Shown: positions 632 through 6,776 of the stretch, piece by piece
Position numbering within the stretch: the first letter of the stretch is position 1
Layout: each line of letters opens with the position of its first letter
Assembly (NCBI RefSeq): GCF_006345805.1
Contig: NW_021828931.1
Location: 1 to 7,214, forward strand
DNA: 7,214 nt
Source of the DNA: Octopus sinensis
Taxonomy: Eukaryota
Reading direction: 5' to 3'
Made by a program: the position numbers and the translations under genes
The notes under the pieces: generated by a model
What the model was told of the DNA's origin: nothing
What the model saw: only the letters and a program-made list of their open reading frames with translations
Database searches by the model: none

Positions 632-739
632 AATATATATATGCATATATAAATATATGTACGTATGCAATGGTTTTTATGTGTATATGTACAAACATGC
701 ACACACACACACACACACACACCACACACACCACACACA

Positions 740-770
<31 letters not shown>

Positions 771-796
771 CACAGATATAATTACGTATTTATATA
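632..796. repeat. Compound TA / CA microsatellite (CA core ~699-774 with CCA interruptions)
   Basis: Directly visible. Confidence 0.92.
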
Positions 797-3403: not shown

Positions 3404-3444
3404 GTGTGTGTGTGTGAGTGTGTGCGCGTGTGTATGTGTGTGTA
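3404..3444. repeat. Imperfect (GT)n microsatellite
   Basis: Directly visible. Confidence 0.9.
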
Positions 3445-3613: not shown

Positions 3614-3739
3614 CTTCTTCTTCTTCTTCTTCTTCTTCTTCTTCTTCTTCTTCTTCTTCTTCTTCTTCTTCTTCTTCTTCTTCTTCTTCTTCTTCTTCTT
3701 CTTCTTCTTCTTCTTCTTCTTCCTCCTCCTCCTCCTCCT
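3614..3739. repeat. (CTT)36 followed by (CCT)6; reads (AGG)6(AAG)36 on the coding strand, 27 nt after the stop codon
   Basis: Perfect CTT run at 3614-3721 and CCT run at 3722-3739. Confidence 0.97.
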
Positions 3740-3766: not shown

Positions 3767-5671
3767 TTAGACTGACGGTGGCTTTGGGGCCGTGAGCCTA
3801 ATCTTGTCTTTACGATAAGAGAAAAACTTTTGGTAGCTCATTAAATCGCTGGCCACCACCAGAACTAACGGTATTATAATCACGGTTATCCCCAAGTAAC
3901 CAATGGCTGTTGCAGAGTAACGATTATCTACAGCACTTGATTTGGTTCTTTTGTATTTACTGAGACCTTTTTTGTCAACTGTCAGCTCTTTGGAAATATT
4001 CATGAGTCTTTCCTGCAAGGGTAAGATTACTGATTGGTCAATGCTGTCTCGCTTACCACCGTCCTGGTTGAAAAACGAACTTAAAAGTGCAGAATGTTGC
4101 CCGCAAGAAGAATAAACACATGACATCATTTGTTCGGTGGGCAACAAAGACAATGCATCACGGGAAGAGGAATAAGTTGTAGCGGGAGCAAAAGAAGAAA
4201 GATGAGATGAGGGTGATGAGAAAGATGATGTTGAGAAGAAACTTGGAAACGAGGATAAATTCACAAAATGCTGGGTTTCCGTTTGAGACGGTTCTTGGCT
4301 GGTGTTCGGTTCAAAATCTGTGGTCGTTATTTCTTTTGACGTTTCAATATTTAGAGTTTTCGAATTAGAGAACAGCATCGCCGAAGAATTGGTTGGAGAG
4401 GTTCCACTTGCGTTCAGTTTTGATTTATGATTCGAGAACGTCGATAAAAGCTGGAAACTTCCGGAATTTATTTTTGATGGAAGAAAATATGGCGAGGAAG
4501 TCAACAGAAATTCATCGGGAAAAGAAGTTGTTTGCATATTAGTACTGACAAAAGTGCGAGAAGTTTCTAAAACCGAGGACGGCAAAGAAGAGGTTAGAGA
4601 AGATAAATGGTCGTAAATGGTGCTGTCGCTGTTCTGGTTGGAAATCGTAGAAAGAGTACCAGTTGTGAAGGCGGTGTTGATGTTATTGTTGCCACCATGA
4701 TTTGGATGGTTTGGCGGATAACTTGAAGAAGTTTGATAATCATTGACCTTGCTAACGGAGGCAGATTGCTGATCCGTAGCAGAGACATTTTGAATGCTTG
4801 CGTTTAGAGAATGACTCACCGAACCGTGAACATTGGAGAACGTAGAATATTCTGATTGGTGAACGGAAGATGACGGGCTGAGTGAATTTAAGTTGGACAA
4901 TTTCACCATCTTTGTTACTGTGGTGGACATCATCGTCGCCATGGTTGTGGGTTCAGTGAGATTAACTTTAAGTTCGAAATCCGGGACAAGGATGACTTCT
5001 CCGTAATGGAACTGGTTCTCTGGTATGTAACCATTAAATTTAAACCAATATTCTACGGCAGCAGACTTATCCAATAACATCATCGATTCAAGCCACCAGC
5101 TTTGGTAAAGATGTACGTCGAATTCTACGTGGATAAGTTCCACTTCTTTCAAGACACCGATGTCCGGCATCGACCATGAGAACACGTCGACTTGGTTCCT
5201 CTGGAATAATTCGTCGCCCGCCGTAATATCCAAGTTCCACACACCTTTGGTACCGTTCAGCTCCAAGTAAATAGTACCATTGGTGCCAGCATCTGTAGAA
5301 TTTCCCGTAGTTATGGTTAATTGCCATTCTGTGATTGTAGTGTCAGAAACGGTATGATGGTTGTTAGTGCTGTTGAGGTTGGTGGTTGTGGTAGTAGTGT
5401 TGGTGGTGCTAGTTGTGTTGAAAGCGGTGGGGATATTGTTGTTGTTGATGGCGGGGAGGACAGAGGCGGTGGTCATTTTAGAGTTGTTGTTGGTGATGGT
5501 AGTGTTGGCTACGGAAGAAGTGGTGTTGGCGGTGTGGACGGTGCTGGTGGTGGCAGTGGGGATGATGGTCATATTAGAGTCAGCGCTGTTATTGGTATTT
5601 GCCGGGTTCGAATGACACACAAGAAACATCCAGAAAAATGGGAACAGAAACCATGTGACACCCACTGCCAT
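3767..5671 (-). CDS. Single-pass (type I) membrane glycoprotein with a PLAT/LH2 domain and mucin-like Ser/Thr stalk, 634 aa, CDS without introns
   Basis: 1905 nt open frame in DNA otherwise full of stops. The ATG is in strong Kozak context (aagATGg) and the stop is TAA at 3767-3769. The translation has a coherent order: hydrophobic N-terminus, PLAT motifs, S/T stalk, TM helix, short basic tail. About 19 N-X-S/T sequons by my manual count, all N-terminal to the TM. Confidence 0.9.
   Translation of the reverse strand: MAVGVTWFLFPFFWMFLVCHSNPANTNNSADSNMTIIPTATTSTVHTANTTSSVANTTITNNNSKMTTASVLPAINNNNIPTAFNTTSTTNTTTTTTNLNSTNNHHTVSDTTITEWQLTITTGNSTDAGTNGTIYLELNGTKGVWNLDITAGDELFQRNQVDVFSWSMPDIGVLKEVELIHVEFDVHLYQSWWLESMMLLDKSAAVEYWFKFNGYIPENQFHYGEVILVPDFELKVNLTEPTTMATMMSTTVTKMVKLSNLNSLSPSSSVHQSEYSTFSNVHGSVSHSLNASIQNVSATDQQSASVSKVNDYQTSSSYPPNHPNHGGNNNINTAFTTGTLSTISNQNSDSTIYDHLSSLTSSLPSSVLETSRTFVSTNMQTTSFPDEFLLTSSPYFLPSKINSGSFQLLSTFSNHKSKLNASGTSPTNSSAMLFSNSKTLNIETSKEITTTDFEPNTSQEPSQTETQHFVNLSSFPSFFSTSSFSSPSSHLSSFAPATTYSSSRDALSLLPTEQMMSCVYSSCGQHSALLSSFFNQDGGKRDSIDQSVILPLQERLMNISKELTVDKKGLSKYKRTKSSAVDNRYSATAIGYLGITVIIIPLVLVVASDLMSYQKFFSYRKDKIRLTAPKPPSV
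3842..4018 (-). other. Juxtamembrane helix/basic motif plus transmembrane helix (aa 552-610; TM ~aa 589-608, nt 3848-3907)
   Basis: LQERLMNISKELTVDKKGLSKYKRTKSSAVDNRYSATAIGYLGITVIIIPLVLVVASDL. The uncharged stretch AIGYLGITVIIIPLVLVVAS is followed by a basic cytoplasmic tail (positive-inside rule). Confidence 0.8.
4136..4960 (-). other. Ser/Thr-rich mucin-like stalk (aa ~238-512)
   Basis: About 275 aa dominated by S/T with P, N and F, containing no Cys and with several sequons. Typical of a disordered, O-glycosylated spacer. Confidence 0.8.
4982..5329 (-). other. PLAT/LH2 domain (aa ~115-230)
   Basis: Hallmark motifs in the correct order and spacing: WQLTITTG..DAGT.GTIYLELNG..G, LFQRNQVDVF, DIGVLKEVELIH, SWWLESMML.D, EYWFKFNGYI. 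These match the PLAT pattern Y.v.v.TG...AGT...V.i.l.G..G / FerG..d.F / lG.l..i.i.h / W.l..v.v / y.F.c..W. Confidence 0.88.
5330..5608 (-). other. N-terminal Thr/Asn-rich low-complexity (glycosylated) segment, aa 22-114
   Basis: Runs such as TTSTTNTTTTTTN and INNNNI are encoded by ACC/AAC-type triplet repeats (GGT/GTT on the + strand). Eight N-X-S/T sequons (N27, 33, 49, 56, 62, 85, 91, 100). Confidence 0.85.
5609..5671 (-). other. Predicted signal peptide (aa 1 to ~21, MAVGVTWFLFPFFWMFLVCHS)
   Basis: Hydrophobic/aromatic core ending in a small-residue site (VCHS|NP or CHSNPA|N), followed by polar, sequon-rich sequence. The exact cleavage site is not determined. Confidence 0.75.
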
Positions 5672-5725
5672 CTTCTTTCTCTTTTCTTTCTCTCTTTTCT
5701 TCTTTCTTTCTTGCTTCCTTCCTTC

Positions 5726-5785
<60 letters not shown>

Positions 5786-5786
5786 T
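5672..5786. repeat. Polypyrimidine/polypurine tract including (CTTT)15 (5727-5786), directly abutting the start codon
   Basis: 115 nt of C/T with a single G (5713), so the coding strand is essentially all purine up to the ATG. Confidence 0.97.
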
Positions 5787-5817: not shown

Positions 5818-5923
5818 CTATCTATCTCTCCGTTCGTCCGACTCTCTATCTCTCTCTCTCTATCTATCTATCTATCCGTTCAATTTGAGAGATGTATATA
5901 TTTATATGTGTATATTATATATG

Positions 5924-5967
<44 letters not shown>

Positions 5968-6031
5968 ATATATATGTATGAATTTATATGTATGTATATA
6001 CGTATATGTGCATGTATATATTCATGCATAT
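5818..6031. repeat. (TC)/(TATC) repeats followed by an imperfect (TA)n/(TATG) microsatellite
   Basis: Directly visible. Confidence 0.9.
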
Positions 6032-6333: not shown

Positions 6334-6344
6334 ACACACACTCG

Positions 6345-6401
<57 letters not shown>

Positions 6402-6446
6402 CCACACCACATACACCACAACCACACAATTACACACACAACATAC
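6334..6446. repeat. Imperfect (CA)n microsatellite
   Basis: Directly visible. Confidence 0.93.

Positions 6447-6536: not shown

Positions 6537-6570
<34 letters not shown>
6537..6570. repeat. (TA)17 microsatellite
   Basis: Perfect TA run. Confidence 0.95.
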
Positions 6571-6659: not shown

Positions 6660-6746
6660 GAATATTATGAATTCAAAAAGTTTTTTTACATAATTGCCAC
6701 AGTTGAATATTATGGAATTCAAAAAATTTTTTTACATAATGCCACA
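6660..6746 (+). repeat. Tandem duplication of a 42 bp unit (6660-6701, 6705-6746)
   Basis: gaatattatg(g)aattcaaaaa(g/a)tttttttacataat(t)gccaca occurs twice, with 1 substitution and 2 single-base indels. Confidence 0.92.
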
Positions 6747-6776
6747 TGTATAAATATAGTCTTTGGTAACAGGGAT

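What the first reader, a model, noticed from the sequence alone, without database searches (positions are those of the whole stretch)
3767..5671. Orphan receptor-like architecture: an extracellular, enzyme-free PLAT domain displayed on a mucin stalk
The sequence shows signal peptide, T/N-rich cap, PLAT, ~275 aa S/T stalk, TM and a 25 aa tail. In established families PLAT is cytosolic (lipoxygenases, polycystin-1 loop, LOXHD1, RAB6IP1/DENND5) or is the accessory domain of a secreted enzyme (pancreatic/lipoprotein lipase, clostridial alpha-toxin). Here a lone PLAT, with no catalytic domain and no REJ/GPS/multi-TM polycystin parts, is held away from the membrane on the outside. I do not recognise a named family with this layout. 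My inference is a surface or lumenal tether that binds lipid interfaces or partner proteins, such as a lipase or lipoprotein dock, a membrane-contact adhesin, or a mucus or glycocalyx component. This is the strongest novelty candidate in the window.
Basis: partly seen in the sequence, partly recalled or inferred. Interest (0 to 1): 0.7.

Follow-up and report, generated by a model that had tools for sequence, protein, structure and literature searches.

The report
Cephalopod membrane protein displaying lone PLAT
The window holds a real, intron-less gene found so far only in octopuses and cuttlefish; it encodes a membrane-anchored protein that most likely shows a single enzyme-free PLAT (lipid/protein-binding) domain on the outer or lumenal side of the membrane, an uncharacterised variant of a known theme whose function is still untested.

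Summary
The 634-codon ORF (3767-5671, minus strand) is real. It has one stop in frame against 26-44 in the other five frames. Intact single-exon orthologues exist in O. vulgaris, a third octopod and three sepiid cuttlefish. PLAT passes Pfam's threshold (35.1 bits, cut-off 23) and a confident model matches lipoxygenase and lipase PLAT domains. Exactly two hydrophobic segments exist (aa 1-20 and 587-610). dN/dS is lowest in the N-terminal segment, PLAT and TM (0.18-0.32) and highest in the low-complexity parts.

New here: the last ~75 residues (juxtamembrane helix "KELTVDKK…SA-D-R-S", TM, basic tail) form a conserved cassette. It also ends a protein with MAM and TSP1 domains, which are obligately extracellular. 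This supports PLAT lying outside or in a lumen.

- The "stalk" is S/T-rich and probably disordered, but it is not a classical mucin domain.
- The T/N cap is octopus-only.
- Signal-peptide cleavage is unverified.
- The O. vulgaris annotation splices away the signal segment.
- Enzyme-free PLAT proteins in the secretory pathway are already known (plant PLAT1/PLAFP, spider-mite TuPLAT10).

Verdict: a new variant of a known kind. Function and transcription are untested. Interest is moderate.

The parts
3767..5671 (-). Complete single-exon ORF, 634 aa plus stop
   Evidence: One stop in frame against 26-44 in the other frames. The identical protein is already in NCBI/UniRef for this scaffold. Intact orthologous ORFs: O. 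vulgaris L002 54260-56143, L001 30-1991, A. esculentum L003 92-1360, A. pharaonis L009 9194-10468.
5609..5671 (-). N-terminal hydrophobic segment (aa 1-21, MAVGVTWFLFPFFWMFLVCHS): signal peptide or signal anchor
   Evidence: KD above 1.6 at aa 1-20. Helix 4-21 in the full-length model. dN/dS 0.18 against the third octopod. A hydrophobic N-terminus is also present in all three cuttlefish proteins. Cleavage was not tested.
5336..5608 (-). T/N-rich low-complexity cap (aa 22-112), octopus-specific
   Evidence: T 32%, N 21%. dN/dS about 1.4, with in-frame indels among octopods. Absent from the cuttlefish orthologues. pLDDT below 30.
4964..5335 (-). PLAT/LH2 beta-sandwich (aa 113-236; Pfam match 117-226)
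   Evidence: dN/dS 0.32 in octopods and 0.26 in cuttlefish. The nearest sequences are repeats of multi-PLAT, LOXHD1-like proteins at 25-30% identity.
4142..4963 (-). S/T-rich, probably disordered linker (aa 237-510)
   Evidence: S+T 38%, Pro 5.5%, hydrophobic 25%. No tandem repeat. pLDDT 22-30. dN/dS 0.54 in octopods and 0.84 in cuttlefish. About 150 aa in cuttlefish, with a few shared short motifs.
3917..4141 (-). Conserved membrane-proximal region (aa 511-585): Cys518/Cys523, two predicted helices, motif KELTVDKK-LS-YKR-KSSA-D-R-SA
   Evidence: Invariant columns. Helices 546-563 and 567-578 at low confidence. The motif is shared with the MAM/TSP1 protein P0157. No Pfam or PDB match.
3839..3916 (-). 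Transmembrane helix (aa 586-611) with invariant Pro601 and Asp609-Leu610
   Evidence: KD up to 2.6. Helix 586-615. dN/dS 0.28. Invariant columns.
3770..3838 (-). Short basic tail (aa 612-634) with a YQKF (YxxPhi-like) motif next to the membrane and a -PSV end
   Evidence: 6 K/R in 23 aa. Y-x-K-F is conserved in octopods and cuttlefish. Reading it as a sorting motif is inference.
5369..5371 (-). Internal AG (caacAG|c, codon of Ser101) where the O. vulgaris gene model joins upstream exons to this ORF
   Evidence: The N-terminus of P0001 diverges exactly before 'STNNHH'. DNA. The model's first exon is at L002 10001, 44 kb upstream.
5673..5786 (.). (TTCT/AAAG)n microsatellite that abuts the start codon
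   Evidence: Also present directly 5' of the ATG in O. vulgaris and in L001.
3614..3722 (.). (CTT/AAG)36 microsatellite 45 nt past the stop codon
   Evidence: L001 also ends in (GAA)n right after its stop.

Best explanation
This is a genuine, intron-less, fast-evolving protein-coding gene, found so far only in coleoid cephalopods (octopuses and sepiid cuttlefish).

Shown: the product has an N-terminal hydrophobic segment, one non-catalytic PLAT beta-sandwich, a long low-complexity S/T-rich linker, a conserved membrane-proximal helix motif, one TM helix and a short basic tail. The last ~75 residues form a modular anchor cassette that also ends a MAM+TSP1 protein.

Inferred:
- The N-terminal segment targets the protein to the ER.
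- PLAT, linker and juxtamembrane helices then face the outside of the cell or the lumen of a secretory or endolysosomal organelle, and the basic tail faces the cytosol. The topology is type I if the signal is cleaved, or a two-span hairpin if it is not.
- PLAT acts as a binding module for a lipid interface or a protein partner, held at a distance from the membrane by a probably glycosylated, flexible linker.
- The conserved YxxPhi-like motif next to the membrane would let adaptor complexes sort or recycle the protein.
- The conserved dibasic YKR-K site about 12 residues outside the membrane could allow the ectodomain to be shed.
For: Real coding gene:
- One in-frame stop against 26-44 in the other frames.
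- All nine indels among three octopod sequences are multiples of three.
- Intact single-exon ORFs in six taxa, including genomic DNA of O. vulgaris, A. pharaonis and A. esculentum.
- Region-specific purifying selection. Octopods: N-terminal segment 0.18, PLAT 0.32, TM 0.28, against cap 1.4 and linker 0.54. Cuttlefish: PLAT 0.26 against linker 0.84.

PLAT.

Topology:
- Only two hydrophobic segments, both conserved.
- The C-terminal cassette matches the end of P0157 (43% identity over 74 aa, pairwise E 2e-11, profile E 6e-7 against 5.8 billion proteins). In P0157 the cassette follows MAM (E 4.9e-9) and TSP1 (E 2.4e-11) domains. From established knowledge these are disulfide-rich extracellular domains.
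- The sequon GN[S/A]T in the first PLAT loop is invariant in all family members.

Precedent for a non-catalytic, membrane-tethered PLAT in the secretory pathway: AtPLAT1/PLAFP and TuPLAT10.
Against: - No transcript evidence could be obtained. The Logan contigs end in microsatellites, and the one run I could identify is used as genomic short reads in the paper that cites it.
- The O. vulgaris annotation (CAI9739220.1) uses two upstream exons and an internal acceptor, giving a protein without the signal segment. That product would be tail-anchored with PLAT in the cytosol.
- Both flanks of the TM helix are basic (7 K/R before, 6 after), so the positive-inside rule does not settle orientation.
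- Small residues at -3/-1 are not conserved across species, and the cuttlefish segment is long (about 24 aa). Cleavage is therefore doubtful (sequence inspection).
- Sequons are not enriched overall.
- The cassette link to extracellular domains rests on one partial protein from an unidentified sample.
- No binding partner, lipid specificity, tissue or compartment is known. The canonical PLAT 'GTD' and 'FERG' acidic residues are N and Q here, so Ca-dependent membrane binding of the lipoxygenase type may not apply.
Confidence: 0.6

Rival explanations
1. Cytosolic PLAT on a tail anchor. The true mRNA starts at upstream exons, as in the O. vulgaris model, or at an internal Met. The product has no signal, the C-terminal TM (23 residues from the end) inserts post-translationally, and PLAT and the S/T-rich region face the cytosol, as in LOXHD1 or polycystin-1.
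For: The O. vulgaris model P0001 lacks the hydrophobic N-terminus and joins at Ser101. The TM lies within about 25 residues of the C-terminus. The nearest PLAT sequences are LOXHD1-like repeats; that such proteins are cytosolic is from my own knowledge.
Against: The hydrophobic N-terminus is kept at the very start of the ORF in all six taxa, with dN/dS 0.18-0.30. Cuttlefish have no T/N cap, so they lack the acceptor site used in the octopus model. The window's own organism has the 634-aa single-exon protein on record. The same anchor cassette follows MAM and TSP1 domains in P0157. The two upstream exons encode 73 residues with no domain.
Confidence: 0.12
2. Shed or secreted product. The membrane form is only a precursor. 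Cleavage at the conserved dibasic YKR-K site just outside the membrane releases a soluble PLAT-linker glycoprotein into mucus, a gland secretion or an extracellular coat.
For: A conserved basic cluster (K572, K574, R575, K577) lies 10-14 residues before the TM in octopods, cuttlefish and P0157. A long S/T-rich linker is typical of secreted glycoproteins (inference).
Against: The site is not a canonical furin R-x-K/R-R motif. It lies in a predicted helix. The TM and tail are themselves under constraint (dN/dS 0.28 and 0.61; invariant Pro, Asp-Leu and Lys), which suggests the anchored form matters. There are no proteomic data.
Confidence: 0.15
3. Not a functional gene: a chance or decaying ORF in A/C-rich, microsatellite-rich DNA, or a retroposed fragment of a LOXHD1-like gene drifting neutrally.
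For: Overall dN/dS is high (0.50-0.55). O. sinensis against O. vulgaris shows 11 non-synonymous to 1 synonymous difference plus a 7-aa indel. The ORF is intron-less and bracketed by microsatellites. No transcript evidence was obtained.
Against: The ORF is intact in both octopods and sepiids, two deeply separated coleoid lineages. All indels are in frame. PLAT, TM and the N-terminal segment have dN/dS 0.18-0.32. One stop against 26-44 in the other frames. By my binomial estimate the 11:1 ratio does not differ significantly from neutrality (p about 0.19).
Confidence: 0.03

Closest known systems
Single-PLAT non-catalytic proteins (plant PLAT-plant-stress family, AtPLAT1/PLAFP; spider-mite TuPLAT10)
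   Same: One PLAT domain and no catalytic domain. A predicted signal peptide and one TM helix, hence secretory-pathway or membrane-tethered. Proposed to be non-enzymatic lipid (phosphatidic acid) binders.
   Different: Those proteins are under 200 aa, with no cap, no long linker and no conserved C-terminal cassette. None of the 149 nearest PLAT representatives listed is a short single-PLAT protein, so the cephalopod PLAT is not a close sequence relative of that family.
LOXHD1-like multi-PLAT proteins
   Same: Nearest PLAT sequences: 25-30% identity per repeat and summed E down to 5.5e-81.
   Different: Those have 8-17 tandem PLAT repeats, and most lack both a signal-like N-terminus and a C-terminal TM by hydropathy. 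The window protein has one PLAT between a signal-like segment and a TM anchor.
Polycystin-1 / PKD1-like / REJ proteins
   Same: Membrane proteins that contain one PLAT. Weak sequence match to polycystin-1 PLAT (E 1.4).
   Different: No REJ, GPS/GAIN or 11-TM region. PLAT is the only Pfam hit and there are only two hydrophobic segments. In polycystin-1 the PLAT sits in a cytosolic loop after the first TM (established knowledge).
Pancreatic and lipoprotein lipase C-terminal domain; lipoxygenase N-terminal domain
   Same: Same fold: Foldseek E about 1e-6, TMq 0.56-0.63, rmsd 2-3 A. The lipase PLAT is extracellular.
   Different: No alpha/beta-hydrolase or lipoxygenase catalytic domain. In the alignment the stretch of engineered Stable-5-LOX that, by my knowledge, replaces membrane-inserting Trp13/Phe14 aligns with the conserved sequon N-S-T-D. 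The 'GTD' and 'FER' acidic residues are N and Q.
Membrane glycoproteins with a glycosylated exoplasmic region, one TM and a short YxxPhi tail (membrane mucins, LAMP/CD68 type)
   Same: Overall plan: S/T-rich region, single TM, short basic tail with a Y-x-x-hydrophobic motif near the membrane. This is a resemblance only.
   Different: No SEA, LAMP or EGF domain. No tandem PTS repeats and low Pro. The distal domain is PLAT.
Apicomplexan LCCL/LAP (CCp) adhesive proteins
   Same: Described as predicted secreted, extracellular adhesive proteins. The three papers listed contain the terms LH2 and PLAT, but I read only titles and abstracts; that an LH2/PLAT domain is part of these proteins is from my own knowledge.
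   Different: Large multidomain proteins (LCCL, SRCR, lectin and other domains) without a TM anchor. Unrelated lineage. No sequence comparison was made here.

Membership tests
PLAT/LH2 domain superfamily (PF01477) | Sequence match above Pfam's gathering score | tested here: met
   35.1 bits against 23, E 2.5e-8, aa 117-226. Also met in P0056 and P0001.
PLAT/LH2 domain superfamily (PF01477) | Eight-stranded beta-sandwich fold | tested here: met
   Model pLDDT 74.9 with 8-9 strands. 69 PDB matches at E <= 0.001. Every row among the 50 listed that I could identify is a lipoxygenase, lipase or Rab6IP1 entry, all PLAT-containing proteins.
Polycystin-1 / PKD1-like | REJ and GPS/GAIN domains plus a multi-pass TM region, with PLAT in the first cytosolic loop | tested here: not met
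   PLAT is the only Pfam family, even at E <= 10. There are only two hydrophobic segments. The orthologues are single-exon ORFs of 422-653 aa.
LOXHD1-like | Tandem array of many PLAT repeats, no signal and no TM | tested here: not met
   One PLAT stretch. Hydrophobic segments at both ends.
Lipase or lipoxygenase with accessory PLAT | Catalytic domain adjoining PLAT | tested here: not met
   No lipase or lipoxygenase Pfam hit. PDB sequence hits cover only the PLAT part.
PLAT-plant-stress / single-PLAT proteins | Small protein (under 200 aa) made of a signal and one PLAT only | tested here: not met
   634 aa (422-424 in cuttlefish), with linker and cassette.
PLAT-plant-stress / single-PLAT proteins | Closest sequence relationship of the PLAT domain to that family | tested here: inconclusive
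   No short single-PLAT protein appears among the best 150 of 419 hits. No direct comparison with AtPLAT1 or TuPLAT10 was made.
Type I membrane glycoprotein (topology class) | Cleavable N-terminal signal peptide | not testable with these tools
   A hydrophobic segment at aa 1-20 is present and conserved. No signal-peptide predictor was available, and the -3/-1 positions are not conserved between species.
Type I membrane glycoprotein (topology class) | Single stop-transfer TM near the C-terminus, with the ectodomain on its N-terminal side | tested here: inconclusive
   The TM at 587-610 is present. Orientation is supported only indirectly, by the homologous cassette after the MAM/TSP1 domains of P0157. 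Both flanks are basic.
Membrane mucin | Pro/Thr/Ser-rich tandem-repeat domain | tested here: not met
   Pro 5.5%, S+T 38%, hydrophobic 25%. No tandem repeat in aa 237-510.

The most novel reading that the evidence does not exclude
Coleoid cephalopods may have a lineage-specific, modular 'anchor cassette' (juxtamembrane KELTVDKK...SA-D-R-S helix, TM and basic tail) that has been joined to different extracellular domains (PLAT here, MAM+TSP1 in P0157) to build new surface receptors. Under this reading the PLAT member is an intron-less, fast-evolving invention in which a normally intracellular, LOXHD1-type PLAT repeat was moved to the cell surface. There it would act as a lipid- or partner-sensing receptor, for example in contact chemosensation, gamete recognition or secretory-granule biology.
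Probability: 0.15. Interest if true: 0.7.

Novelty: new variant of a known kind. Interest (0 to 1): 0.42.

Why it matters
PLAT is best known as an intracellular membrane-docking module or as a helper of secreted lipases. A conserved animal protein that presents a lone PLAT on the exoplasmic side through a long flexible linker would add a receptor-like use of the fold in animals. It would sit beside the small PLAT-only proteins of plants and mites. The shared C-terminal cassette hints at domain shuffling onto a common anchor in cephalopods, a group known for lineage-specific genes.

There is also a practical point. All three public annotations of this gene family outside the window's own organism are wrong or incomplete:
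- The O. vulgaris model loses the signal segment and carries a spurious 'histidine kinase L-like' name.
- A. pharaonis has only the last 155 aa annotated.
- The automatic gene calls on the third-octopod contigs L001 and L014 start at an internal Met.

Homology-based surveys would therefore miss the family.

Tried and rejected
1. A word-index search with the PLAT domain alone found nothing, not even the 98%-identical O. vulgaris protein. I treat this as a failure of that search mode, not as absence. The exhaustive search found 419 PLAT relatives.
2. Scans of the C-terminal cassette against Pfam and a profile search against PDB sequences gave only chance-level hits (E at or above 0.18).
3. Literature searches for PLAT with cephalopod or octopus found nothing relevant. 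One search was malformed.
4. Run accessions: only ERR12945500 could be tied to a species, Acanthosepion esculentum short reads. SRR11869394/85, SRR19746223 and ERR1237xxxx remain unidentified.
5. Transcript evidence from Logan contigs was rejected. The contigs end in microsatellites like genomic unitigs.
6. Overall N-glycosylation sequon enrichment as topology evidence is not significant.
7. The positive-inside rule is uninformative because both flanks are basic.
8. The upstream exons of the O. vulgaris model are not within the 7.2-kb window.
9. The full-length AlphaFold model is too poor (pLDDT 36) to say anything beyond 'PLAT plus helices plus disorder'.
10. L002 was not available to scripts, so its CDS was brought in through DNA alignment.
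Full report
**1. The observation**

The window is the whole 7,214-bp scaffold VCDQ01006368.1 of assembly GCA_006345805.1. From memory, not tested, this is the Octopus sinensis assembly. It is AT-rich and full of microsatellites.

An ATG-initiated ORF of 634 codons runs on the minus strand from 5671 to 3767, exactly as reported. The reading frame has only its terminal stop, while the other five frames of the same stretch contain 26-44 stops. The open frame is therefore not a by-product of A/C-rich composition. The identical 634-aa protein is already on record in NCBI/UniRef for this scaffold.

**2. Domain content**

Pfam finds one family only, PLAT/LH2 (aa 117-226, E 2.5e-8, 35.1 bits against a cut-off of 23). 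PDB sequence matches are weak and confined to PLAT (5-LOX E 0.24, polycystin-1 E 1.4).

An AlphaFold model of aa 100-255, built with five family sequences, has mean pLDDT 74.9 (core blocks 83-94) and 8-9 strands. Foldseek matches it to the PLAT domains of coral 8R-lipoxygenase, pancreatic lipase, lipoprotein lipase, 5-, 12- and 15-lipoxygenases and Rab6IP1 (E about 1e-6, TMq 0.56-0.63).

Hydropathy gives exactly two hydrophobic segments, aa 1-20 and 587-610. The other regions are:
- Cap (aa 23-112): 32% T and 21% N.
- aa 237-510: 38% S+T, but only 5.5% Pro, 25% hydrophobic residues and no tandem repeats.
- Tail: 23 residues with six K/R.

The full-length model is poor (pLDDT 36). It shows only PLAT, an N-terminal helix (4-21), two membrane-proximal helices (546-563, 567-578) and a TM helix (586-615). 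The cap and linker have pLDDT 22-30, consistent with disorder.

The layout is therefore confirmed. 'Mucin stalk' should be softened to 'S/T-rich, probably disordered linker'.

**3. Relatives**

The full-length word-index search found only two proteins:
- O. vulgaris CAI9739220.1 (P0001), named 'hybrid signal transduction histidine kinase L-like'. The only Pfam domain in it is PLAT, so in my judgement the name comes from a low-complexity match.
- An unnamed Logan protein (P0002, 68% identical).

The exhaustive PLAT search gave 419 hits. The best are long proteins with 8-17 PLAT repeats (LOXHD1-like) at 25-30% identity. Only two are close single-PLAT proteins: P0002 and P0056 (47% identity, 422 aa).

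A profile of PLAT plus the C-terminal region added three more:
- P0155 (423 aa).
- P0156, from the cuttlefish Acanthosepion pharaonis.
- P0157, discussed in section 6.

P0056 comes from runs that include ERR12945500, which a cuttlefish genome paper identifies as A. esculentum short reads. The A. pharaonis genome holds an intact 424-aa single-exon ORF, of which the annotators called only the last 155 aa.

The family is therefore present in octopods (three taxa) and sepiids (three taxa). No squid, nautilus or non-cephalopod member surfaced. With these tools, that absence is weak evidence.

**4. Is it a constrained coding gene?**

All nine indels among the three octopod sequences are multiples of three.

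Nei-Gojobori dN/dS, window against the third octopod (dS 0.345):

| Region | dN/dS |
|---|---|
| N-terminal segment | 0.18 |
| Cap | 1.4 |
| PLAT | 0.32 |
| Linker | 0.54 |
| Membrane-proximal region | 0.52 |
| TM | 0.28 |
| Tail | 0.61 |
| Overall | 0.55 |

The cuttlefish pair gives 0.30, 0.26, 0.84 and 0.62 for the N-terminus, PLAT, linker and C-terminal part. The structured parts are under purifying selection and the low-complexity parts are nearly free.

Window against O. vulgaris shows 11 non-synonymous to 1 synonymous difference plus a 7-aa indel in the cap. By my binomial estimate this does not differ significantly from neutrality (p about 0.19).

**5. The gene-model conflict**

The O. 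vulgaris model spans 46 kb. Its first 73 residues come from two small upstream exons and join the ORF at an AG inside the Ser101 codon (window about 5370). This removes the hydrophobic N-terminus and the cap.

Four points argue against that model:
- The O. vulgaris genome itself keeps the full single-exon ORF, including MAVGVTWFLFPFLWMFLVCHS.
- The third octopod keeps it too. The automatic gene call there starts at an internal Met.
- The cuttlefish ORFs begin directly with a hydrophobic segment and have no cap, so they lack that acceptor.
- The upstream exons add no domain.

I therefore take the single-exon CDS as the main product. An alternative 5' exon is a minority possibility that only transcript data can settle.

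**6. Topology**

No signal-peptide or topology predictor was available. The conserved N-terminal hydrophobic segment could be a cleaved signal. In O. sinensis, C-H-S|N or A-N-T|N fit the -3/-1 rule by inspection. It could also be an uncleaved anchor: the cuttlefish segment is about 24 residues and no good cleavage site is apparent. In either case PLAT and the linker would be exoplasmic.

The positive-inside rule is uninformative, with seven K/R before the TM and six after. Sequons are not enriched overall, at 19 against 15 +/- 3.1. One sequon, GN[S/A]T in the first PLAT loop, is invariant.

The best new evidence is P0157. This is a partial protein from an unidentified sample with the end of a MAM domain (E 4.9e-9) and two TSP1 repeats (E 2.4e-11). 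It ends in the same cassette: KELTVDKK...RKK-SAPDDR-S, a TM with the same Pro, then DL-N and a basic tail. Identity is 43% over 74 aa, with pairwise E 2e-11 and profile E 6e-7 against 5.8 billion proteins.

MAM and TSP1 are extracellular, disulfide-rich domains (established knowledge). In that protein the cassette is therefore a type I anchor with the N-terminal side outside. By homology the same holds here. This rests on a single relative.

**7. Likely mechanism**

Shown:
- A non-catalytic PLAT.
- A flexible low-complexity spacer.
- A conserved membrane-proximal helix motif.
- One TM with invariant Pro601 and Asp609-Leu610.
- A short basic tail.

Inferred:
- ER targeting, glycosylation of the linker and display of PLAT in exoplasmic space.
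- PLAT as a binding module for a lipid surface or a protein partner. Precedents are colipase and lipoprotein binding by lipase PLAT domains (my own knowledge) and phosphatidic-acid binding by plant PLAFP (as reported in the paper read).
- A conserved Y-Q/R-K-F next to the membrane, which looks like a YxxPhi sorting signal. The protein may therefore cycle between the surface and endosomal, lysosomal or granule membranes.
- A conserved basic cluster (YKR-K) about 12 residues outside the membrane, which could be a shedding site.

One cautionary detail comes from the alignment to Stable-5-LOX. The stretch that, from my knowledge of that engineered construct, replaces the membrane-inserting Trp13/Phe14 of wild-type 5-LOX aligns with the conserved sequon N-S-T-D. 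The usual acidic residues of the 'AGTD' and 'FERG' motifs are N and Q. In a motif count over the nearest PLAT representatives, D is the commonest residue at the first position (542 matches against 58 for N) and E at the second (331 against 43 for Q). Lipoxygenase-style Ca-dependent membrane insertion should not be assumed.

**8. Comparison with known families**

The protein works most like the small non-catalytic, secretory-pathway PLAT proteins:
- AtPLAT1/PLAFP: predicted signal and one TM, co-localised with the ER.
- TuPLAT10: 180 aa, with a predicted signal peptide and one TM, proposed to be a membrane-tethered PA carrier.

It is not a member of that family by size or architecture, and no such protein appears among its nearest sequence relatives. 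By sequence its PLAT is nearest to LOXHD1-like repeats, but it fails that family's defining repeat architecture. It lacks every polycystin feature except PLAT, and it lacks any catalytic domain.

Among the 149 nearest representatives, several multi-PLAT proteins have signal-like N-termini. One (P0123) looks like signal + 8 PLAT + C-terminal TM + KKRKK tail. Exoplasmic, anchored, enzyme-free PLAT is therefore not unique in sequence space, although it is unannotated.

**9. Verdict**

- The gene defines an unnamed, coleoid-restricted family (as far as sampled) with a new architecture built from a known domain: a new variant of a known kind.
- The added findings are the conserved anchor cassette shared with a MAM/TSP1 protein, the octopus-only cap, the intron-less structure in six taxa and the faulty public annotations.
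- Function, compartment, tissue and even transcription remain untested, so interest is moderate (0.42).

Noticed in passing
L002 10001-56143 (O. vulgaris OX597836.1) against window 5369-5671: The public O. vulgaris gene model CAI9739220.1 replaces the first 100 codons, including the signal-like segment, with two small exons 44 kb upstream. It carries the name 'hybrid signal transduction histidine kinase L-like'. PLAT is its only Pfam domain, so the name is most likely a low-complexity artefact. The genome itself keeps the full single-exon ORF at L002 54260-56143.
   Followed up: yes
L009 9194-10468 (A. pharaonis CAHIKZ030000286.1): The cuttlefish genome has an intact 424-aa ORF with the full architecture, but the public annotation calls only the last 155 aa (P0156, 'unnamed protein product').
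   Followed up: yes
L010 218-1165 (Logan SRR19746223, P0157): A partial protein with MAM and two TSP1 domains ends in the same juxtamembrane/TM/tail cassette as the PLAT protein. The reading frame continues upstream to a stop that looks like an intron end, so the last exon is large. The organism is unknown.
   Followed up: partly
window 5673-5786 and 3614-3722: The ORF is bracketed tightly by microsatellites. (AAAG)n on the coding strand runs right up to the ATG, and (AAG)36 starts 45 nt after the stop. Repeats are also seen at the corresponding positions in O. vulgaris (5' side) and the third octopod (both sides). The only poly(A)-signal-like hexamer (ATTAAA) within about 860 nt downstream is 418 nt past the stop (window 3348).
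   Followed up: partly
window aa 128-132 and 157-160 of the ORF (about nt 5276-5290 and 5192-5203): The canonical PLAT motifs 'AGTD' and 'FERG' read AGTN and FQRN/G in every family member. Both acidic residues are amides. In a motif count over the nearest PLAT representatives, D (542 matches against 58 for N) and E (331 against 43 for Q) are the commonest residues at these positions.
   Followed up: partly
window 3770-3838 (tail, aa 612-634): The tail carries a conserved Y-x-K-F (YxxPhi-like) motif next to the membrane. In octopods the C-terminus is -PSV or -LSI, which resembles a class I PDZ ligand. Cuttlefish end in -ENV or -ENI.
   Followed up: no
window ORF against L002 54260-56143: O. sinensis and O. 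vulgaris differ by 11 non-synonymous and only 1 synonymous substitution, plus a 21-bp indel in the cap. This suggests relaxed or diversifying selection, but the ratio is not significant on its own.
   Followed up: partly
P0123, P0004, P0008, P0059, P0069, P0084, P0088, P0104 (one search hits): Several unannotated multi-PLAT proteins have signal-like N-termini. P0123 looks like signal + 8 PLAT + C-terminal TM + KKRKK tail. Exoplasmic PLAT arrays without enzymes may be commoner than textbook lists suggest.
   Followed up: partly
window 700-774, 1202-1301, 2122-2177, 2696-2808, 3404-3443, 5895-6000, 6334-6440, 6537-6570, 6660-6757: Outside the gene, the scaffold consists largely of (CA)n, (TGTA)n and (TA)n microsatellites plus a 46-bp unit in two copies. 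No other convincing ORF was seen. The remaining listed ORFs are translations of repeats.
   Followed up: no
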